A stretch of 64,000 nucleotides of DNA, taken from Podarcis erhardii. Taxonomy: Eukaryota. The notes beneath the pieces were generated by a model, which saw nothing but the letters and a program-made list of their open reading frames with translations, was not told the DNA's origin and made no database searches. Both the position numbers and the translations under genes were made by a program. This document shows, piece after piece, positions 1 to 59,389 of the stretch (position 1 is its first letter; the number at the start of each line of letters is the position of its first letter). The DNA lies in NCBI GenBank assembly GCA_964252035.1, contig OZ176200.1; one strand, given 5' to 3'.

Positions 1-999
1 GAGCTCAAATTCATAACTTCACTTTAAAAAAATAACATGTTTTTTTAATGGAACAGGATTATTTCAAATGATGTTCTGGGGAGTGAAGGGCAGCTTGTTT
101 TTCTATTATTAAAATAAATTATTAAACATGTGGTATTAAATGCAAGGAATGATCTAACAAAATCAAAGCATTTCTTATTGCATTTTGCCATGTGCTGTGT
201 AAAGAATTCAGCTCATTCTTTACAGTGCATTGCATAATGCTAGTTGACATAAAGCTGGTTTCAAAACACATGATGGCTATCTTACATGTGCCCTTAAATT
301 ATTGATTAACTGGGTTTTTTTGTTTTTTAGTAAAATGTCACCTATTTCTCCATAGAGATTCAACCTGGCTAACAAAACTGAACAGAACAAACCTAATCTC
401 CTTTAAAAAAACAACAACAACCAATATGCATTCAAGTTTATAAATGGACCATTTCCAATTCTGCTTAACAAAAATAACACAGAACTGATCCAGCAAAATA
501 AAAAGAGAAAATATGCAATTAACCAAATTCCATTTTTAAAAGCCAGGTCTTCAGCAACTGCTTGAAGCAGTATAGTTATAGTGCCTAATGGACCTCGCCT
601 GGGAAGGCATACCATAGGAACCACTGCCAGAAACTAACAGGAAGAAGTCATGCAGCAATAATGATGAGAACTAGAGAGGCTACATCAGGTACAAGGTAGA
701 TGTTGTTCAACCCCCAACTCCCATCTGTGTCCATTGGCCATGCTGGCTGAGACTGATGGGAGTTGGAGACCAACATCAGAAGGACCAGTAGGTGTGCATC
801 CCTGGAACAATCCAGATGACTGCATTGCAGCAGCCTGACATGTGAATCTGAGGCATCTGATCAAGGCCTGTATTTTAAAATGAGCTTAAAGATACATTTG
901 CAAATGTTTGTATGTTTCATGTCAGGCAGAAACCAGCTGGCTAAGTACTTTGGCAGTTGTTTATCTTCCTGCTCTCCTGAACAAGGACCCCCCTGATTT

Positions 1000-5160: not shown

Positions 5161-6602
5161 CCCAATTTTAAGACTCTGTGTTCCAGTGTACTCTTCTTTG
5201 CTTATAATTTCTCCTGAAGTTCATGAAACATTTCCCCAAGGGATTTATGACTGTGATGATATTATTATTATTATCATTATCATCCTTATTGAAGATGTTG
5301 CCTTGGTTTTCCTCCATTAAAAAAAAAATGTTCAAGGGTTCTCACATACTAATGTACATACAATATGATAAAAATAAACAGGAGATTAAAACGCTGCATA
5401 AAATAACCCAACAGCAAGCAGTAGGATTCAGTCAAATGCTGGGAAAGCTGTCAGCAGATAAAAATCATGAAGATGTTCTTAGCCAATTTCCCCAGGCAGA
5501 CATTCTATAAAGTGGGCACCACTGCAGAAATTGCCCTGCTTAGACAGATGATATGTTATTGTTCTGCTTTGTAAAGAACACTTTGTTATTCAATGGTCAC
5601 ATATTCTTATTGAAAATTGTGAGACGTGGGAGTGTTCTCTGAATATATTATAAAAGTATGCTAATGCTCATTGTTCCCCATTATGTTGTCCAAACGCCAT
5701 GTCACTGTTCCCACTGTGAGCCATCCACTCTCCATATTCTCTCTCCTTCCTCTTTCCATAGACAAATATTTCCGTGTGTGTTTAGGTATGAATATGTAAA
5801 TGGTCCCTTTCTGATAATTAGGCTGCTTACTGTGGACAGTAAGCCCAGATGAACACAGTGGTACTTAACTTCTGAGTGCGCCTGCAGAGGACTGCACTGC
5901 ATAACAGATAACATTGAGTTTATGGCGTTAGTACTTAGTTCTTAGTGAAACAAAGCACATTTCTGTGGAAATAATCTCCATTTAATTTTTCCTTGAAGGA
6001 AAAGCCACAGTGTATGGTCAGATGCAGTGCTATACAGTATTCCAAGTCTGGATTCTAGTCTTGCACCATTTTCCTATCCAAAACCCTCCTCTCCAATTAC
6101 ACTTTGCCTTCGTGTTCAATGCAACTAACTTTTGGGTAGGATTGTCTTTTTAAAAAAATAATAATATTTATTAACATTTTAAAGACTACAAAAGAAAGAA
6201 AAAGAGTTAAACAAAACAATACAATACAATACAAAAACACCACACAACACCACACAACACCAACACCATAATATTAAATTAACAAAACAAAATAAACACA
6301 ATTTAAAACACATCCAATAATTTCATTATCTTGTCTTTCATTCCCTTGTTTCAACGACCTCCTCACACCTCCCTTTTTGTATTCCACTTTAATTAACTGT
6401 TTCAGCAATTCCTTTCCATCTTCCTCTGTTTTCTGTCCTGTAATTTATCTTAACATATTCTAACCTTATTTTTTTCCTTTAATATATAATTGTCTTAACA
6501 TATTTTAACCTTATTTTCCCTTTAATACTCTAATAATCTATTTGTACTTAATTCCTTATAACATCTCTACTAAAGCCATATAACTCCTTTCCAACATTTT
6601 CC

Positions 6603-6735
6603 TAACACTCATTAATTTTACAATATTTTTATAAATAGTCTTTAAACTTTTTCCAATCTTCTTCCACCGACTCTTCTCCCTGGTCTCGGATTCTGCCAGT
6701 CATATCCGCCAATTCCATATAGTTCCATCAACCTG
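6603..6735 (-). pseudogene. C-terminal ~45 codons of L1/Tx1 ORF2
   Basis: Translates as YMELADMTGRIRDQGEESVEEDWKKFKDYL*KYCKINEC*, homologous to YAELDRLTGRIRNRRDQRFTEDWNKFTEYIKNIC in the ORF2 fragment at 58520-58891. Confidence 0.8.
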
Positions 6736-7531
6736 GTGATCTTCTGTCCGATGCTCTTAACTCTTTTCCAAGTCCCTTCTGCGAGTCTTTTTCATATTTA
6801 TACTTGAACTTTACTTTGTCTTCCACTGATCTTATTTTTATTTTCCTTCCTTTGAAGCTAAAGAGTAAATCTCGGGGAAACTCCCACCTAAAGATGATTT
6901 TATTCCTTCTCGACAGGGCAACCAAATCTCCGTAGTTAAATCTAAAATCCAAAAGGTATTTCAGAACGTCTTTCAAAATTTCCACTCTTAACTGTTGTTC
7001 TTCTAAGTTCTTCTGGTAGTTCCAACAGTCTCTTATTTTGTTCTTCTCTTTTTTCCCTCCTCTTCCAAGTCCAAAGGCCCTCACAGTTTTAATCTCTTCT
7101 TGACCCAAATCTCGGTCCCAAAAATCATCAAATTCCTGTGTGGGGAAATCTATCAAACTTTCCTTCTCGAGTTCAGGTAGGGTTCTGATCCTCAAAATCT
7201 GATTTTCTTTAGATTCAATCATAGCAGGCATCAACTTCATAGCAGGCATCAACTTATGGTCATCAAATTGCATCTGTAAGGCTGGGACTCTCTCTCTCTC
7301 CAATTGTGTTACTTTAGGTTCAACGGCAGTAACTTTCTCCCTAGCCTTCTCTGCAGTTTGCCATGTCAAAGTAGATTCCTGTATCGATTTCTGAATAGTT
7401 TCTGTATTTGTGTTCACTTTTTGTCCCAAATTATCGATTTTGGTAGTTACCACATCCACCTTTTTGTGAAGCTGTTCCAGTGAGTCACTTATCTTACATA
7501 ATAAAACCACTAAGGCCTCTTCTGTCGACAT
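6728..7531 (-). CDS. L1-type ORF1p-like protein (coiled coil + RRM/CTD-like), 267 aa from ATG MSTEE...
   Basis: Heptad-rich N-terminus (LEQLHKKVDVVTTKIDNLGQKVNTNTETIQ) and a C-terminal IIFRWEFPRDLLFSFKG motif like vertebrate L1 ORF1p. The true ATG at 7531 is supported by an aligned ATG in the nested relative; the track start at 7546 is a non-ATG extension. Confidence 0.7.
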   Translation of the reverse strand: MSTEEALVVLLCKISDSLEQLHKKVDVVTTKIDNLGQKVNTNTETIQKSIQESTLTWQTAEKAREKVTAVEPKVTQLERERVPALQMQFDDHKLMPAMKLMPAMIESKENQILRIRTLPELEKESLIDFPTQEFDDFWDRDLGQEEIKTVRAFGLGRGGKKEKNKIRDCWNYQKNLEEQQLRVEILKDVLKYLLDFRFNYGDLVALSRRNKIIFRWEFPRDLLFSFKGRKIKIRSVEDKVKFKYKYEKDSQKGLGKELRASDRRSPG

Positions 7532-8100
7532 TCTCAACCGATTCAAGGTCCCCAGAATCTCACAGCTTTTTATCTTGCAGCTGGAAATCCCCCCAGCTCA
7601 ACTCTTGTAACAGTTTCAAAGGCTTCCTCTAGAGGGAAACAGTTTCTATTTGTATTAGTCCTTTTAAACTCAATTCAAACAATAAAGTTAGTTTCAATTT
7701 TCTGTTACTTTTACTCCTTTTTAAACGCAGACGGAGACAGTGGAAACAATGTATTCCTTATTTAACTAACTGTCAGTGAACGTTCTAATCACGATCAATA
7801 AGCATTCCAGAACACGTCAGTCCTGTTGGCAGCCCGTTTCCAGGATCGGAGCGGTGGTATTTTAACTCTGTTCGCTCTCTCCTGCAGGTATACTCAGTCC
7901 AAAACTTCCCCCCCCTTCTCCTGCCACCAAGGGGAGGGTTAGTATTTTTTGCTGATGGGAATTTAGTCCTTTACAATAGGCTTTCCGAGGCTTCAGCTTG
8001 CATCCTCATTGCTTCAATCTATTTACAAAAGGGGAAGGTGGACTTCCTGTTTTAGACCTCCCCGTTTCGACACCAAATGAAGATGTTTTTTAAAAAATCC

Positions 8101-9311
8101 GGGACTTCCGGGTTAGCGCCATCGGCAATGGCGGAATTCCCCTGATCCAGAGGAACCTGTTCCGCGAAAATTGGGTCTTGCCACTGCGGCGAAGGCGGAG
8201 ACCCTTTAAAAATCCCAGGCGGAGGAAGCCTGGGAACGTGGGATTCGGCTGACACCAGGAACGCCCCCCCTACACGCAAGGAAACCCCTTTTTCGGGGAC
8301 CTGAAGCGACGTGGGGTGAGCGGCACAGTGTTTTGAATCGACCGCTATTTTTACAGAGTGAAGCTGCACAGCCGTTGCCGGAGAGCGCTGACTTTTTCCT
8401 GGGGACAATTGGACTCTAAACAAGTACCCGTGAGTAGAACGGAAAATTGGGCTAAGAAACACTTTAATTTGGCACTCAGCGGGAAGGTTCTAAACAGGAA
8501 GTCCGCCTTCCGCTTTTGTAAATAGTCTGAAGCAAAAATTGTGCAAGCCAAAGTCTGGAAAGTTGTACATAAAGGTTTTTAATTCCTCCTGTTTTGATCA
8601 TCTAAACCCCTCTTGGAAGCAGGAGTAAAGAGGGGAAATTTGATTGTTCAAGCCTGCAGGAGAGAGAGTAAAGAAAGATAAATTTCCACCGTCTCAGACC
8701 TGGGAACGGGGTGTCAGGGACGGAGATTTTTGGTGAAGTTCATTGACTATGAATGGAACATCTTTTGACAGTTAGTTGAAGAAGAGAAACAAATTGATTC
8801 CAATGTTGCCTTTTGCATTTAAAAGAAACAAAAAATCAGAAAAATGAAAGTAATTTTTCTTTGTTGGATCTGCTTTTAAAAGATGGATACAAATAGAAAT
8901 TGCCTCCTCTAGAGGGAGCTTGTTAAATTGTTGCTGGAGTCGTTCTGGGGATTTTGCAGCTGTGGAGATTAGGATCGTGGGACCAGACTGTGACCTTGAA
9001 CAAAAATGTATTTGGAAGAAGTTTTGGTGCTTGCTTTTTGCAAGACAAGCACTTTGTTGGAGCAGATGCATGAGAAGATGGATTTGATGACCGTTGCAGT
9101 CAGAAACTTTGGAAGATATGGAATATTGTGTTTTTATTGTTATTGTTGTATTGATTTTTAGGGGGGTTTTTTCTTTTTTTCTTTTTTTTCTTTTTTCCCT
9201 TTTTTAAGTATTGTTATATATGCTTTGAAAATTTTTTGTTGTTGTTGCTTTCTTCTTTTTTCTTTCTCTGTAATTTTTGAAACTTCTAATAAATATCATT
9301 TAAAAAAAAAA
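8101..9311 (+). mobile_element. 1.2-kb non-autonomous L1 derivative (5'UTR + ~37 ORF1 codons + 3' tail + polyA)
   Basis: Starts GGGACTTCCGGGTT and is colinear with the outer element's 5'UTR. ATG at 9006 gives MYLEEVLVLAFCKTSTLLEQMHEKMDL, matching MSTEEALVVLLCKISDSLEQLHKKVDV. AATAAA is followed by an A10 tail. It is flanked by AAGATGTTTTTTAAAAAATCC (8080-8100) and AAGATGTTTAAAAATCC (9310-9326). Confidence 0.8.
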
Positions 9312-9757
9312 GATGTTTAAAAATCCAATTCTCCACTCTACTCACAGGTAGTTGCTTTAAGATCAAATTGTCGACAGGAAAAAGTCAGCGCACTCCGGCA
9401 ACAGCTATGCGGCTTCGCTCCGTGGAAGAAACAGTCAATTCGAAGCACCGCGCCGCTCACCCCACGTCGCTCCGGATCCCCGAAACCGGGTTTCCCCGCA
9501 AGTAGGGGAGGCGCAAAAGGTGCCAGCTGAATCCCACGTTCACAGGCTTCACCCGCCTGTGATTTTTAGTGGGTCTCCGCCTTTGCCGTGGCGGCCAGAC
9601 CCAGATTTCCACGAGGCAAATTCCTCCCGATCAGAGGAATTCAGCCATTGCCGGAGGCACCAACCCGGAAGTCTAAAGGATTGCATTGTCACTGATTTTT
9701 CTGAACATCACTTGGAAATCCTAGCTGAAAGGCAGCATAGAAATATTTTAAAATAAA

Positions 9758-9965
9758 CTAGGGCAGCACCCCCTGCTCACAGAGCTCGCCAAGCCCCCTT
9801 ACCTGCCACTCGCTCCCTTTACATCCTGCTCAACCCCCTTCCTTTACACCTCACCAAACTCCCCCAGCCCCTCCCCTTACATATCTCAACCCCCTCCCCT
9901 ACACATCACCCAAACTGCACTCCCCATTCACTTGCAAATTGGCCAAACCATGCCCCACTTCCCAT
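9758..9965. repeat. C-rich degenerate repeat; terminus shared with 57330-57362
   Basis: TAGGGCAGCACCCCCTGCTCAC is the reverse complement of GTGAGCAGGGGTGCAGCCCCTA (near 57362), followed by imperfect CCCCTTACAC units. Confidence 0.4.
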
Positions 9966-10045
9966 GCAGATCTGCCAGTTCTCTCTATTGCCCCTCCTGA
10001 AGAGCGCAGAGCCTCATCAAGGAAGGGCTAAGGCTTTGAGCACCC

Positions 10046-10518
10046 TGTGGGACAGACCGAGAAGGAGGCGAAGCTGGAATCAGTGAGGCAAGACACAGCC
10101 TTGCCATCAAGAACCAGGCACCACTTCCTTAAGTGGGATCAGACACACCAGCTCAGGTGTGTGTTTCAATGTGTGGTGGACCCATCGGGTAAGAGAGTCT
10201 TGGAAATAAACTTGCCCTGCCTCATCTTTAACAGCTTGGCCCCCACAAAGTTGATGGGCATTCCCATTCAAATAGTGTGTGTGCACTGCGTCATGTGAAC
10301 AGTTATGTGGAGAGAGGCATACCTGGGCTTCCACAAGTTGGCTTATCCAAGTTGGCACCCCTGTCTGCATCTACTGCTTTGCTTGCATACCTAGGAATCA
10401 TGATTCCTGGATTCAGTGCTTCCTGCTGAGCTTATCCTGTTAGTAGCCTGAATAAAAACCTCTGCCTTACTCTCAAGTATGAGCAGCTGTCATTGTGTTT
10501 CGGGATGGCAGCATGACA
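10046..10518 (+). mobile_element. possible solo LTR
   Basis: TGTGGGACAG...CATGACA termini, AATAAAA at ~10451, and a purine-rich start like the other LTRs here. No TSD found. Confidence 0.4.
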
Positions 10519-16700: not shown

Positions 16701-17264
16701 TTTCTTTAGCTTGAGGCAGAGTAAACCTCTACTGGATTGAAGTAATGTAGAAATATTAGAAAAGATTGGGGCTGGGAATTCTTCCCTTCCTCCCCATTCT
16801 CCTTGCAGGGTGATTGGAGGAAAAATGTCTGACCTAAATCTGCCAGACACCTTCAAAAGCAGAAAGATAAAAATGTGTGAGGGGAGCGGTAAAATCTGCA
16901 AGCCACCCAGCACCAGTGAATAATTGTTATTGGAATGCAAATGCCACTAGATTAATCTGAAGGGGAAACAAAATCTGAGCAAGTGTTAAATGATTATAGT
17001 TTTACTCTCATATTTCTTTTTTTTCTTGTCTAGATAGATATTCTGCACTATAAATAAATATTTTCAGATGTAAGCATGCGCCTCATGCACATTAACTTGT
17101 TTTAATTTTATTTGAAATTTAAGCGAGAGAGGGAGGGCTAGACTTGAGGGAGAGCTAAATTTCAAACTGGAGCACCACCTACAGCATATTTGGTCAAATT
17201 GCAACGTGGGGGGGGGGGAATCCTTTTTGAAAACGAAAACAAGCAGGTCTAAACACCACCATTT

Positions 17265-18426
17265 TATTTGATTTGTTTTTAAAACTTTTTTATTAATAGT
17301 GCATAAAAAGAATACAAAATGGCACAGAGAAAATACATAAGTACACAAAGACAACTACCATATACACATACGAAAAGAACTTTCCCATCCCCATGATATC
17401 CTATCACCACACCTAGCGACTTCCCTCCACTACAGCTTGACTTCCATAGGTTTTGAATTCAATACCCAACATGGCAATCTTTTAGGTTTTTTATTTTAAG
17501 CTTTGTATAGACTATGTTATTATTATTATTACTTTCCCCCCTGTTCCTTTAGTCTAGGCATATCAGCATGTTCTTCTCTGAACAGTGTTTGTCCATATAT
17601 TCTTCAAAACATTGCCATTCTTGTCTTTGTTTTTGATTTGATTGCATTCTTATATATGCAGTTAGCTTCGCCATTTCGATAAATTCACTTACTTTATATA
17701 TCCAGTCATCTTTGGTGAGTATTGACTCATTCTTCCATTTGCTAGCAAACGCTATCCTGGCGGCTGCTGTGGCATAGAGAAAAATTCCTTTCTTTTTTGT
17801 GGTATATCTTTCCCCAGTAGGCCTAATAAGAATGCCTCTGATTTCTTTTGTATAGGTATTTTAAACATTTTTTTAAGTTCTTCATGTATCATGCCCCAAT
17901 ATGTCTTAGCTTTTTCGCAGCTCCACCAGGTATGGAACATTGTTCCCTCCACTTTCCCACATTTCCAGCGTAGGTTTGACTTTTGTTTATAAATTTTGGC
18001 AAGCTTAGATGGTGTTAGGTACCACCTGAAAAACATTTTCTTGAAATTTTCTTTTATATTGTAGCACGCGGTGAACCTAATGTCAATGCGCCAGAGTCCT
18101 TCCCACTGGTCCAAATAAATCGTGTGGCCGATGTCTTGCACCCATTTTACTATCATTCTCTTTTACTTCTTCTTCTTGGAGGTCACATTCTACTAAAAGG
18201 TTATAAACTTTAGATAGTATTTTCTTATTATTTTTCAATAGTACTTTATGCAATTTTGATTCTTCTCTGTCAAATCCTCTTTTTATATCTGTTTTAAAGA
18301 CACTTTTTAATTGATTACATTGGAGCCAATCCGATAAATAATGCCTTATTTCATCAAATTGTTTTAACTTTGGTTGACCTTGTTCTTCTGTCAGTAATTG
18401 TCTATAGGTGGCCCATCCGCTTTGCA
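17265..18426 (-). mobile_element. 5'-truncated L1/Tx1 LINE (ORF2 C-terminus with Cys/His zinc-knuckle region, frameshifted)
   Basis: ORFs 18083-18439 and 17752-18156 (RWYLTPSKLAKIY...WKCGKVEGTMFHTWWSC). A perfect 15-bp TSD TAAACACCACCATTT lies at 17250-17264 and 18427-18441. Confidence 0.9.
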
Positions 18427-24528: not shown

Positions 24529-24658
24529 NNNNNNNNNNNNNNNNNNNNNNNNNNNNNNNNNNNNNNNNNNNNNNNNNNNNNNNNNNNNNNNNNNNNNNNN
24601 NNNNNNNNNNNNNNNNNNNNNNNNNNNNNNNNNNNNNNNNNNNNNNNNNNNNNNNNNN
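24529..24658. other. assembly gap (130 N)
   Basis: Run of N. Confidence 1.
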
Positions 24659-56987: not shown

Positions 56988-58301
56988 TAGTAAGAATGGG
57001 CAAAAGGGATGAAGATGAGAGCAGGGGCATGGAAGCGTGACTTCATAGCCGGGCAAAAGGTTATAAGGATACTTGGTAGTTGCAATGTGAGGGAGGAGGA
57101 AGATACAAGAGGTTACCATGGGGTGGTTTGTGTGCTTGGTGGGGGTCCACAAAATAAGGGGGAACACATGGTCATCAGGGGGGAGGTGAAAATGGGTGCA
57201 AAGTGGGGCTGCAGAACAGAAGAGAGGCTTCGGAAATGGAGTTGGGAAGGTGAAAAATGAGGCTAGTAGTTGCATGGGGTTGGAAGGAGACGCTCCAGGG
57301 AGTTATTGTAGGGGGAATGGCAGCAGAGTTGGTGAGAGGAGTGAGCAGGGGTGCAGCCCCTAGTCTAATATAAAAGCAGAAGAGCTTTTCCTAAAGATCA
57401 GCATTAAAAAAATTAAGTTTAACCTACGCATTCAGAAGTAGGAGCTTACTCCCTGGAAACGGTACATAGGATTGCAATCATGCTGATCCTAATCAAGTGG
57501 GTATTGTGCAGTATCTTGCTGCTCTTTGGGTTTGTGTATTTTAAGGACTGACAAAGATGCTCGGCTTTTTAAAGACTCGTTAGGGGCATGGCTATGTAGA
57601 CTATCATGGCGAGATCCTGAGTTTCAAAACTTGCCACTTGATACCTGTCTTCTTTTTCACAGCCACCATAACTAGGGAGTATTGCCCTAACTGAACACAG
57701 TGGGTCTGAGAAAACAGCCGTAGGTTTCTGCTGCATAGCCCTTACATTGGACTAGGCTGTTTCTTTGTAGTAGGGCATGCAAGATAATCACAAAGTTTTT
57801 GAAACTATTTTTCAGCGGCTTATAATTCAGCTGTACATAAAAGCAGTTTTGTAGCATCAGCTTATTTTTAAAATGTGGTTTATTTTTTATTGAGGGGCTT
57901 CTTGCCTCTTTCCGATACATGCTTTCCATAGCTAAAGTTAAGATCAAATTACCATTTAATTTTCCATGTGCACATTTTTGAAGCATCCAGCCTCAGAATG
58001 AAGCATTCATGACAAAATAGGTTGTGTGTCCGTGCTTGTTGCCTTGCCATGTGTTTGCATCAAGACAATATAAATTCTTCAGCAAGCTCACTGGAGCTAA
58101 TTGGATTAGAGTTCCGTTACGTTGATCCCATGAAGACATTTGTCCCTGGAGGCCCTTTATGTTAAAAACAAATTATCAGTGGGGCCTTTTTGTAATTAAA
58201 TTAATGCTTCAACACACTTCCTCCGTCTTGACACTGAAAGACGGCAGACATGGCTAGATAAACACAGCCGCCTGTCAACACAGCATATACTATTTGCTTT
58301 T

Positions 58302-59389
58302 TTTTCTGTATATAATTTTTATTAATTTTCCAATAAAAACAAATTTATAGCACAATTAAACATTAGGAATTCATCACACGTCTTTTTTCTTTTAGACTTC
58401 CATCAACATGTCTGATAATTTTCCGTAGTTATTACATATCTTCACATTTCTTCATTTATATTGCACTATGTATATCTTATCTTACCATGTTATTTAAACA
58501 ATATTTCTACCAAACCTTCTTACAGAGCTTCTTGGAAACTTACAAACATTATATCATTATCACAAATATTTTTAATATATTCTGTAAATTTATTCCAGTC
58601 CTCAGTGAATCTTTGGTCCCGTCGGTTGCGAATCCTCCCTGTTAATCTGTCCAGTTCTGCATAATCCATTAATTTCGTTCTCCATTCTTCAATCGTGGGC
58701 ATTTCTTCTTGTTTCCATTTCTGGGCCACAAGAATTCTAGCTGCTGTTACTGCATACAAAAATACTTTCTGATCCTTCCTTTTTATCTCACCACCTAAAA
58801 TTCCTAATAGGAATGCTTCTGGTTTTTTAACAAATGTATATTTCAATATTTTCTTTATCTCATTATATATCATTTCCCAGAAGCACTTCATTTTTTTACA
58901 TTCTCACCACATATGATAAAATGTCCCTTCTTTCTCCTTACATTTCCAACATTTATTACTCACCTTATACATCTTACGTAATTTGACTGGTGTTATATAC
59001 CATTGATATATCATTTTCATAACATTTTCTTTAATTGTGGTGCATGCTGTAAATCTCATCCCTTCCTTCCATAACTTTATCCAATCATCAAATTGAATGT
59101 TATGTCCAAAATCTTTGGCCCATTGAATCATAACTGATTTAACCTCTTCATCCTTCAAATGCCATTCTAATAGTAATTTATACATCATAGATAAATTTTT
59201 AACTTCATTATTCAATACTTCTCATTGAAACCTAGATTCTTTTTCAAAATAGCCTCTTTCTGCAACCTGAACCTGAACATTTCTAAACATTTCATTAATC
59301 TGAAAGTAATGCAGTCAATCATTTACATGTTCTTTCACTTCTTCATATGGTTTCATTTTCCACTTACTTACTTCTTTCTCGATATACTG
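58302..59389 (-). mobile_element. 5'-truncated L1/Tx1 LINE (ORF2 C-terminus, disrupted)
   Basis: ORFs 58904-59215 (QWYITPVKL...CWKCKEKEGTFYHMW) and 58520-58891; 14-bp TSD TACTATTTGCTTTT at 58288-58301 and 59390-59403. Confidence 0.9.

What the first reader, a model, noticed from the sequence alone, without database searches (positions are those of the whole stretch)
6147..9673. ORF1-only ('half-L1'/HAL1-like) element: open ORF1 joined directly to the last ~45 codons of ORF2
Seen: without the nested insert, this element is ~2.3 kb. It has a complete CpG-rich 5' end, an open 267-codon ORF1, then immediately the ORF2 C-terminal tip, 3'UTR and polyA signal. The endonuclease and RT are entirely missing. 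The tip is homologous to the ORF2 ends of the ordinary L1 fragments at 17.3 and 58.3 kb. Known: mammalian HAL1 elements keep ORF1 only and are thought to be mobilised in trans by L1. Inference: this may belong to a lizard non-autonomous L1 family that supplies its own ORF1p and keeps the 3' segment recognised by a partner's RT.
Basis: partly seen in the sequence, partly recalled or inferred. Interest (0 to 1): 0.75.

Follow-up and report, generated by a model that had tools for sequence, protein, structure and literature searches.

The report
Lizard ORF1-only LINE-1 derivative copy
This is a young 2.3-kb cut-down copy of a lizard LINE-1 jumping gene that keeps its promoter, a shortened first gene and its tail but has lost the copying enzyme, so it must have been copied by a complete LINE-1; it resembles the mammalian "half-L1" elements, but I could not show that other copies share its exact structure.

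Summary
On the minus strand, 9672->6141 is an L1 derivative of 2,302 nt once a nested 1.2-kb mini-L1 (8101-9309, plus strand, own TSD) is removed. It has a CpG-rich 5' end, a 911-nt 5'UTR and an open 267-codon ORF1. ORF1 is joined at about 6735 to the last ~44 codons of ORF2, followed by the 3'UTR and AATAAA. No EN or RT remains (about 3.7 kb missing against a 6,234-bp Podarcis L1).

ORF1 is a true L1 ORF1p homologue, shown only through a profile of relatives (human ORF1p structures, E 7e-19). Pfam does not hit it directly. This copy lacks 15 residues of the RRM core, the N-terminal ~53 residues and the C-terminal ~45.

Contigs from two related species carry the empty site, so the insertion is recent.

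The family claim is only indirectly supported. 58% of the element's 31-mers occur in a species that lacks the locus. I could not count copies with this junction. Four deletion derivatives seen here all have different junctions. The ORF2 tip shows no conserved RNA structure, and the nested mini-L1 moved without it.

The scan has already noted more than 100 HAL1-like elements elsewhere in this genome, one of them of 2,299 letters. These are leads, not tested here.

The parts
6141..9672 (-). Whole inserted block (outer ORF1-only L1 derivative plus nested mini-L1); absent at the orthologous site in two related species
   Evidence: table 8. X1 record 1 covers 5405-6140, then 3 letters, then 9673-9954. 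X7 record 25 covers 5866-6140 and 9673-10265. X3 records 16 and 23 run from the flanks into the element (filled site).
9310..9672 (-). Outer element, first part of the 5'UTR: CpG-rich 5' end starting ACTTCCGGGTT, the same start as the nested copy
   Evidence: CpG o/e 0.93, GC 0.57. 77-79% identical to the 5' ends of the L001 L1 and of the nested copy.
8101..9309 (+). Nested mini-L1: CpG-rich 5' end, 5'UTR, first ~37 codons of ORF1 (ATG 9006), then only the last ~140 nt of the 3'UTR and A10; TSD at 8080-8100 and 9310-9326
   Evidence: Contigs of X7 bridge the site without the insert (joints 8069/9310 and 8078/9336).
7532..8079 (-). Outer element, second part of the 5'UTR
   Evidence: 85% identical to the 5'UTR of the P. 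raffonei L1 derivative (L003 3181-3605 and 5863-5989) and 71% to L001.
6728..7531 (-). ORF1, 267 codons plus TGA: coiled coil, RRM with a 15-residue core deletion, CTD; lacks the N-terminal ~53 and C-terminal ~45 residues of intact lacertid ORF1p
7219..7255 (-). Perfect 18-bp tandem duplication inside ORF1 (LMPAMK repeated), in frame
   Evidence: 100% match, 2.1 copies.
6731..6737 (-). ORF1/ORF2-tip junction. ORF1 homology runs to ...RRSP; ORF2 homology starts at (G)TTGATGG. The TGA stop is ORF2 sequence read out of frame.
6602..6734 (-). ORF2 C-terminal tip, about 44 codon equivalents. It is in frame with ORF1 after the TGA, has an extra A at 6723, a TAA at 6631-6629, and the ordinary stop position at 6604-6602.
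   Evidence: 87-93% identical to the tips of three Podarcis L1s.
6141..6601 (-). 3'UTR with short tandem repeats, AATAAA at 6172-6167, T7, A5 (6151-6147) and GACAAT (6146-6141)
   Evidence: 85.7% identical to the L003a 3'UTR; 60-63% to L001 and L013.

Best explanation
This is a young retrotransposed copy of an ORF2-less L1 derivative. It consists of the L1 internal promoter and 5'UTR, a shortened ORF1, the last ~44 codons of ORF2, the 3'UTR and a poly(A) signal.

Proposed mechanism:
- The element is transcribed from its own CpG-rich 5' end. It starts at the same nucleotide as the independently inserted nested copy.
- Its polyadenylated RNA is reverse-transcribed and integrated in trans by ORF2p from an autonomous L1 of the same lineage.
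- It most likely belongs to a multi-copy, HAL1-like non-autonomous lineage of lacertid L1 rather than being a one-off.
- Its ORF1p probably still trimerises through the coiled coil, but with a damaged RRM it is unlikely to be a fully competent RNA chaperone.
- The ORF2 tip is probably a passenger, not a recognition signal.

Shown: the architecture, the ORF1p homology, the absence of EN and RT, and the recent lineage-specific insertion.
Inferred: trans-mobilisation, family membership, and the state of ORF1p function.
For: - Architecture and breakpoints.
- ORF1p homology.
- Empty site in organisms A and C, filled site in B.
- Both the outer and the nested copy begin at (G)ACTTCCGGGTT, which points to a defined transcription start.
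- The nested mini-L1 has almost no coding capacity but has a TSD and A10, so trans-mobilisation of deleted L1 RNAs does occur in this genome.
- 58% of the sampled 31-mers of 6147-7600 are held by organism A, which lacks this locus. The tip plus 3'UTR make up only 40% of that stretch, so near-identical ORF1/5'UTR sequence must exist elsewhere.
- At least 11 distinct contigs share the window's ORF1-start arrangement through 7550: table 7.
- Summed contig depth of the 5' end (0.85M) is close to that of the 3'UTR (0.9-1.0M). This depth is not a copy number.
- Several in-frame indels with the frame kept open, and dN/dS of 0.11-0.36 against L1 ORF1s.
- Leads only: the scan notes many RT-less 1.6-2.3-kb L1 derivatives in this genome, including one of 2,299 letters against 2,302 here.
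Against: - No second copy with this junction was seen.
- In about 120 kb of Podarcis DNA examined, the four internally deleted L1 derivatives all have different junctions: L1 positions ~1985|5693, ~1085|~6100, 4763|5679 and 1462|2715.
- At least 134, 131, 56 and 17 contigs in the four runs continue from the tip into ordinary ORF2, so most carriers of the tip are ordinary L1s.
- The outer element has no clean TSD and only an A5 tail.
- ORF1p lacks the RRM core segment, so retention of ORF1 may be incidental.
- An open 801-nt frame is expected by chance in so young a copy.
- dN/dS against L1 ORF1s mostly reflects history inside autonomous L1s.
Confidence: 0.6

Rival explanations
1. One-off internally deleted L1. 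A single retrotransposition event produced the ORF1/ORF2-tip junction, either through RT template switching or microhomology-mediated jumping on the L1 RNA, or by copying a uniquely deleted source. The junction was never amplified further.
For: - Four deletion derivatives show four different junctions.
- The L003a junction lies at a TTGGA microhomology, which shows that such jumps happen.
- The window junction allows only about 2 nt of microhomology.
- No shared-junction copy was found.
Against: - Size-biased sampling favours amplified lineages.
- There is 58% 31-mer sharing with a species that lacks the locus.
- Several further in-frame changes in ORF1 (N-terminal loss, RRM deletion) suggest a lineage with its own history.
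- A scan lead reports a 2,299-letter ORF1-only copy elsewhere (untested).
Confidence: 0.27
2. Post-insertion genomic deletion. A full-length ~6.2-kb L1 inserted here and later lost about 3.7 kb in situ.
For: The ends would look the same, and junction microhomology is compatible with end joining.
Against: - The insertion is younger than the split from species whose flanks differ by only ~1-2%.
- Yet the copy would need the large deletion, the nested insertion and several smaller indels in that short time.
- The nested mini-L1 shows that short deleted forms are themselves mobile.
Confidence: 0.08
3. Retrocopy of a spliced L1 RNA (SpIRE-like). A cryptic donor near the end of ORF1 was spliced to a cryptic acceptor just before the ORF2 tip.
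For: - ORF2 reads ...GAAG just before the retained GTGATGG/TTGATGG, a possible AG acceptor.
- Two derivatives have 3' breakpoints only 14 nt apart, at L1 positions 5679 and 5693.
Against: - The closest intact ORF1 protein continues ...RRSP-D-R-G after the breakpoint, so the codon there starts GA, not the GT a donor needs.
- The L003a junction lies at a TTGGA microhomology, not at the same acceptor.
- The DNA of the closest parent was withheld.
Confidence: 0.05

Closest known systems
Mammalian HAL1 (half-L1) elements (Smit 1999; Bao & Jurka 2010, as cited in PMC5753468 and PMC13756887)
   Same: L1-derived, keeps ORF1 only, lacks ORF2 EN/RT, and is presumed to be mobilised in trans by L1. HAL1s arose independently several times.
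   Different: - HAL1 is described only in mammals in the literature I could search.
- Here the host is a lacertid lizard.
- ORF1 is shortened and has a 15-residue RRM deletion.
- A 44-codon ORF2 tip is retained.
- Amplification of this exact form is not shown.
L1 ORF1p type II (coiled coil-RRM-CTD; Pfam Transposase_22; PDB 2ykp, 2yko, 2ldy, 2w7a, 2jrb)
   Same: A profile of 95 relatives aligns to human ORF1p from the end of the coiled coil through the RRM and CTD, including the motifs NLRI.G.PE and FRWEFP..LSF.
   Different: Too divergent for a direct Pfam or PDB sequence hit. This copy lacks the segment that aligns to human IIVRFTKVEMKEKML.
Spliced integrated retrotransposed elements (SpIREs) and other internally deleted L1 insertions of mammals (my own knowledge; not read here)
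   Same: L1 copies with both ends intact and an internal segment missing, inserted as such.
   Different: No GT...AG signature could be verified. Here the missing segment is nearly all of ORF2, so mobilisation must be in trans.
End-only LINE derivatives such as RIME/ingi and NARTc/L1Tc of trypanosomes (my own knowledge)
   Same: Non-autonomous elements made of the two ends of the autonomous LINE. The nested 1.2-kb mini-L1 is of this type.
   Different: A different LINE clade and host. The outer element still carries a long ORF.

Membership tests
HAL1-like (ORF1-only L1-derived non-autonomous retroposon) | ORF homologous to L1 ORF1p | tested here: met
   49% identity over 99% of the ORF to a P. 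lilfordi L1 ORF1p that sits upstream of an EEP-endonuclease ORF2. A profile of relatives hits human LINE-1 ORF1p structures at E 7e-19.
HAL1-like (ORF1-only L1-derived non-autonomous retroposon) | No ORF2 endonuclease or reverse transcriptase | tested here: met
   Only L1 positions 1-307, 1261-1893 and 5693-6125 of a 6,234-bp L1 align. There is no other ORF of 60 aa or more with L1 similarity.
HAL1-like (ORF1-only L1-derived non-autonomous retroposon) | L1 5' and 3' ends, inserted by retroposition (poly(A), TSD, presence/absence) | tested here: inconclusive
   Met: a full 5' start, AATAAA, and an empty site in two related species. Not met: a clean TSD. Only a 7-nt CAATCCT match was found, and the empty-site contigs contradict it. 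The A-run is 5 nt.
HAL1-like (ORF1-only L1-derived non-autonomous retroposon) | Many dispersed copies sharing the same ORF1/3'-end junction | not testable with these tools
Indirect evidence: 58% of 31-mers are shared with a species lacking the locus. Blank results. Chance hits only.
HAL1-like (ORF1-only L1-derived non-autonomous retroposon) | ORF1 kept by selection among copies of the non-autonomous lineage | not tested
   Only dN/dS against autonomous L1 ORF1s could be computed (0.19, 0.11, 0.36). That does not isolate the non-autonomous lineage.
L1 ORF1p type II (Transposase_22) | Direct match to Pfam PF02994 | tested here: not met
   No hit at E up to 10 for the whole ORF or its C-terminal half, nor for P0001 or P0002. 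Five of 95 remote relatives match PF02994.
L1 ORF1p type II (Transposase_22) | Coiled coil + RRM + CTD order | tested here: inconclusive
   - Coiled coil: a single helix over residues 3-91, block-mean pLDDT falling from 77-90 over residues 1-40 to 51 near residue 80.
- RRM and CTD: aligned to 2ykp through the profile.
- The RRM core of 15 residues is deleted in this copy.
- The AF2 models of the C-terminal half were too poor (pLDDT ~30) for a fold search.
SpIRE-like spliced L1 retrocopy | GT...AG at the boundaries of the missing segment in the parent | tested here: inconclusive
   The acceptor-side AG is present. The donor side is not supported by the closest ORF1 protein, which continues RRSP-DRG.

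The most novel reading that the evidence does not exclude
Lacertid L1 has spawned, independently of mammals, a radiating set of ORF2-less parasites of L1 (about 1.2 to 2.3 kb). In these, ORF1 is being whittled down in frame, losing the N-terminus, two heptads and the RRM core.

The 2.3-kb form seen here would be an early, still long-ORF stage. Its coiled-coil-plus-CTD protein would be kept because it co-assembles with, or competes for, the partner's RNP.

If true, this would be a natural experiment on which parts of ORF1p matter for cis-preference and trans-mobilisation.
Probability: 0.2. Interest if true: 0.7.

Novelty: new member of a known kind. Interest (0 to 1): 0.42.

Why it matters
ORF1-only L1 derivatives (HAL1) are documented for mammals. 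I found no description for squamates in the searchable literature.

A recently active lizard counterpart would show that ORF2-less parasites of L1 arise convergently wherever L1 is active. Young copies, an empty site in sister species and a series of differently shortened forms would make several questions testable:
- Is ORF1p needed in cis?
- Which 3' sequences are sufficient for trans-mobilisation?
- How do such elements affect the autonomous L1 population?

This single copy alone is of moderate value. Its ORF1p is damaged, and its membership of a family is not proven.

Tried and rejected
- **Pfam:** the ORF, its C-terminal half, and P0001-P0003 gave only coiled-coil noise.
- **PDB by sequence:** the single sequence and a 3-sequence profile found nothing.
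- **ESM Atlas features:** nothing above 0.9.
- **AlphaFold2:** 3-4-sequence alignments gave pLDDT ~45, with only the coiled coil confident.
- **Word search with the C-terminal 100 residues,** aimed at short Logan ORFs ending ...RRSPG: no candidates.
- **Exact-protein look-up of the 267-aa ORF1:** not on record.
- **22-mer junction scan of JGI metagenomes:** 8 hits, all in 55-70% GC bacterial contigs with no further similarity, so chance.
- **L002, L012 and L014:** ordinary L1 5' parts or fragments, no junction.
- **Conserved RNA structure in the ORF2 tip:** the consensus fold is -2.9 kcal/mol and the single-sequence z-score is +0.29. Rejected.
- **Special conservation of the tip across six diverse L1 3' ends:** not seen.
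- **TSD for the outer element:** rejected (together with the empty-site contigs).
- **Contig ends at 6733-6735 as evidence for a shared junction:** considered and rejected. Intact ORF1 has a tandem RALDRRSP repeat there, and that alone would break de Bruijn contigs.
- **Bao & Jurka 2010** could not be read.

The N-run at 24529-24658 was left untouched.
Full report
**1. What is there**

The region contains one long ORF, on the minus strand: TTG at 7546 or ATG at 7531, to TGA at 6730-6728. From the ATG it is 267 codons.

Read on the minus strand, the element begins with a CpG-rich stretch, 9672->9325. Its CpG o/e is 0.93 at 57% GC; the flanks have 0.16-0.20.

The element is then interrupted by a related element in the opposite orientation. 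A self-comparison shows that 8103-8450 (+) is 79% identical to 9325-9673 (-), and 8453-8962 (+) is 69% identical to 7578-8092 (-).

This nested element spans 8101-9309. It has an A10 tail and a 17-21-bp target-site duplication, AAGATGTTT(TTTA)AAAAATCC, at 8080-8100 and 9310-9326. It carries the 5' end, the 5'UTR, the first ~37 codons of ORF1 (ATG 9006; 46% identical to the outer ORF1 start), and then only the last ~140 nt of the 3'UTR (L1 positions 6100-6234).

Removing the nested element and one TSD copy leaves an outer element of 363 + 1,939 = 2,302 nt.

**2. Boundaries and age**

I laid Logan contigs of four public runs on 5400-10400.

- In organism A (X1, record 1) and organism C (X7, record 25), single contigs run from the left flank to 6140, then 3 letters, then on from 9673. 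These are empty sites.
- In organism B (X3), the flank contigs are nearly identical to the window (1 difference in 772 letters, 2 in 436) and run about 25-30 nt into the element on both sides. This is the filled site, presumably the source species.

The flanks of A and C differ from the window by only ~1-2%. So 6141-9672 is an insertion that arose, or is still segregating, after very recent speciation.

The outer copy begins (G)ACTTCCGGGTT and the nested copy begins GGGACTTCCGGGTT. Two independent insertions therefore start at the same L1 nucleotide, as expected for transcripts from a defined internal promoter.

The outer element has no convincing TSD. The best match is CAATCCT, 7 nt, and the empty-site contigs are incompatible with it. 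Its 3' end reads AATAAA (6172-6167)...T7, A5, GACAAT.

**3. The junction**

Two references were used:
- a P. lilfordi locus with ORF1 followed by an EEP-endonuclease ORF2 (L001);
- an uninterrupted 6,234-bp L1 in the same species (L013 9029-15262).

Against the 6,234-bp L1, the window element aligns only to L1 positions 1-307, 1261-1893 and 5693-6125. About 3.7 kb is missing, including all of EN and RT.

Fine alignments show the following. ORF1 homology continues to ...GACAGAAGATCACCAG. ORF2 homology starts at (G)TTGATGGA(A)CTATATGG.

The closest ORF1 protein found is P0006, 65% identical over the C-terminal half. It reads ...LGKELRALDRRSPDRGLEQ..., so the break comes directly after RRSP.

Further details of the junction:
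- The TGA stop is ORF2 sequence (TTGATGG) read out of frame.
- Because of an extra A at 6723, the rest of the tip is in frame with ORF1.
- The retained tip corresponds to the last ~44 codons of ORF2, up to the ordinary stop position at 6604-6602. This copy has a TAA at 6631-6629.
- At most about 2 nt of microhomology is possible at the break.
- A GT donor is not supported, because the next ORF1 codon in the closest relative encodes Asp.

**4. Is the ORF an L1 ORF1p?**

Direct searches fail:
- Pfam.
- PDB by sequence.
- ESM Atlas.

The word search found three lacertid proteins:
- P0001, P. lilfordi, 370 aa, 49% identity over 99% of the query. One source names it 'L1 transposable element RRM domain-containing'.
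- P0002, from a Logan contig on which ORF1 is followed by the ORF2 EN N-terminus.
- P0003, P. raffonei, a gene model on a rearranged L1 derivative.

Because family scans left the protein open, I ran the exhaustive search with a profile of the C-terminal half. It returned 350 proteins at E <= 1e-3.
- Of 95 that I aligned, 5 match Pfam Transposase_22.
- The 95-sequence profile hits human LINE-1 ORF1p (2ykp and 2yko, E 7e-19 and 8e-19, covering the end of the coiled coil, the RRM and the CTD), mouse ORF1p (2ldy, 5e-17), the isolated human RRM (2w7a, 1e-9) and the mouse CTD (2jrb, 4e-4).

So the family is a divergent type II ORF1p.

The window's copy is shortened relative to intact lacertid ORF1p:
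- It lacks the N-terminal ~53 residues. These are present in L003, where 163 bp separate two segments that lie only 6 nt apart in the window (7540 and 7533).
- It lacks 14 residues of coiled coil, which is variable among relatives.
- It lacks 15 residues (LITLRTKEERDKILN in P0001) that align to human IIVRFTKVEMKEKML. From my knowledge of the ORF1p RRM structure, this is the third strand and second helix of the RRM.
- It lacks the C-terminal ~45 residues.
- It has a perfect 18-bp in-frame duplication.

AlphaFold2 with the shallow alignments gave a confident helix only for residues 3-91, and nothing usable beyond that.

dN/dS against three L1 ORF1s is 0.11-0.36. These paths run mostly through autonomous L1 history. 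An 801-nt frame staying open in so young a copy proves nothing about function.

**5. Family or one-off?**

The source genome is not searchable with these tools.

Indirect evidence for relatives:
- 58% of the sampled 31-mers of 6147-7600 occur in the contigs of organism A, which has the empty site. The source species shows the same share.
- The tip plus 3'UTR make up only 40% of that stretch. So near-identical ORF1 or 5'UTR sequence must exist at other loci. A uniform 58% would correspond to roughly 1.7% divergence from abundant variants (my estimate).
- At least 11 contigs in X3 share the window's arrangement at the ORF1 start (table 7).
- Contigs in X7 bridge the nested-insert site in uninterrupted 5'UTRs (joints 8069/9310 and 8078/9336).
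- Summed contig depth is about as high over the 5' end (0.85M) as over the 3'UTR (0.9-1.0M), against 45-100 for single-copy flanks. The tool warns that this is not a copy number.

Evidence against a dominant shared junction:
- 134, 131, 56 and 17 contigs in the four runs leave the window at 6723 and continue with the reverse complement of ...GGAAGAATGGCAGATGAAGGTGATGG. That is ordinary ORF2 (table 7).
- In the ~120 kb of Podarcis DNA I could read, the four internally deleted L1 derivatives all have different junctions. These are the window's outer element, the nested mini-L1, L003a (ORF2 middle at L1 position 4763 joined to 5679 at a TTGGA microhomology), and an antisense copy in L003 (1462|2715).

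Internal deletion therefore looks frequent and heterogeneous in this L1 lineage.

Earlier notes of this scan list more than 100 'HAL1-like' RT-less elements of 1.6-2.3 kb in this same genome.
- One is 2,299 letters, 'carrying ORF1 but essentially no ORF2'.
- One 1.9-kb form was followed up as a half-L1 with a mini-ORF1.

These are leads I could not test. The size match with 2,302 nt is suggestive.

**6. The role of the ORF2 tip**

Within the window/L001/L013/L003a group, the tip is the best-conserved segment:
- tip: 87-93% identity;
- ORF1: 69-78%;
- 3'UTR: 60-86%;
- 5' end: 64-79%.

Across six more diverse L1 3' ends it is no better conserved than the ORF2 sequence upstream of it.

A consensus fold of eight tips has -2.9 kcal/mol and essentially no covariation. 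The window's tip folds no better than shuffles, z = +0.29.

The nested mini-L1 lacks the tip completely and still transposed. So I see no support for the tip as the signal recognised by the partner's RT. The shared requirement appears to be the 5' start plus the distal 3'UTR and poly(A).

The 3' breakpoints of the window element and of L003a lie only 14 nt apart. With two cases this is an anecdote. It could reflect a preferred template-switch site or descent from a common rearranged ancestor.

**7. Verdict**

The element works like a HAL1. It is an L1-derived, ORF1-bearing, ORF2-less unit that inserted recently and must have used another element's ORF2p.

Membership of an amplified family with this junction is likely (about 0.6) but unproven.

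The claims that it supplies a working ORF1p and that the ORF2 tip is a recognition module are weakened.

In the literature I could search, HAL1 is described only for mammals. A lacertid counterpart would therefore be a new member of a known kind.

Noticed in passing
window 8101-9309 (+), TSD 8080-8100 / 9310-9326: A 1.2-kb mini-L1 nested in the outer element's 5'UTR. It has the full 5' end, the 5'UTR, ~37 codons of ORF1, then only the last ~140 nt of the 3'UTR and A10. It has almost no coding capacity yet a clean TSD, so it was mobilised in trans. Its 5' end forms a 350-bp inverted repeat (79% identical) with the outer element's 5' end.
   Followed up: partly
L003 (P. raffonei CM049768.1) 5863-8165 (+) and 9-685 (-): Two further rearranged L1 derivatives. 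L003a has the ORF1 N-half, a foreign LINE C-terminal fragment (6587-7117), the ORF2 middle and the tip, joined at a TTGGA microhomology; it is annotated as a spliced gene (LOC128406054). An antisense copy joins L1 position 1462 directly to 2715. L003a is the window element's closest relative (3'UTR 85.7%, 5'UTR 85%).
   Followed up: partly
window 58,200-59,200 (-) and 17,200-18,180 (-): Two ordinary 5'-truncated L1 3' parts of more distant L1 lineages. The 58-kb copy has the typical ORF2 C-terminal Cys-rich region with one internal stop. The 17-kb copy is heavily decayed.
   Followed up: partly
window 6728-6631 (-): After the ORF1 TGA, the ORF2 tip continues in the same frame for 32 codons, owing to an extra A at 6723. 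At least 30 contigs of X1 lack that A. Readthrough of the single stop would append an ORF2 C-terminal peptide. This is probably chance.
   Followed up: no
window 10,243-10,400 and 9,780-9,900: To the right of the insertion lie a G-rich GGGGAGGGG-type low-complexity stretch and, from ~10,243, another high-copy repeat (summed contig depth ~124,000-161,000 in X1 and X3, ~19,000 in X7; 89 loose ends at 10,298 in X1).
   Followed up: no
P0006 (838-aa gene model, DNA withheld), P0004, P0012: Annotated 'proteins' in public reptile gene sets that fuse L1 ORF1 pieces to host domains: RING/B-box in P0004 and a receptor-like C-terminal extension in P0012. These are probably gene-model artefacts over L1 fragments. 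Intact ORF1 of the P0006 type has a tandem RALDRRSP repeat exactly where the window's ORF1 breaks off.
   Followed up: no
   Followed up: no
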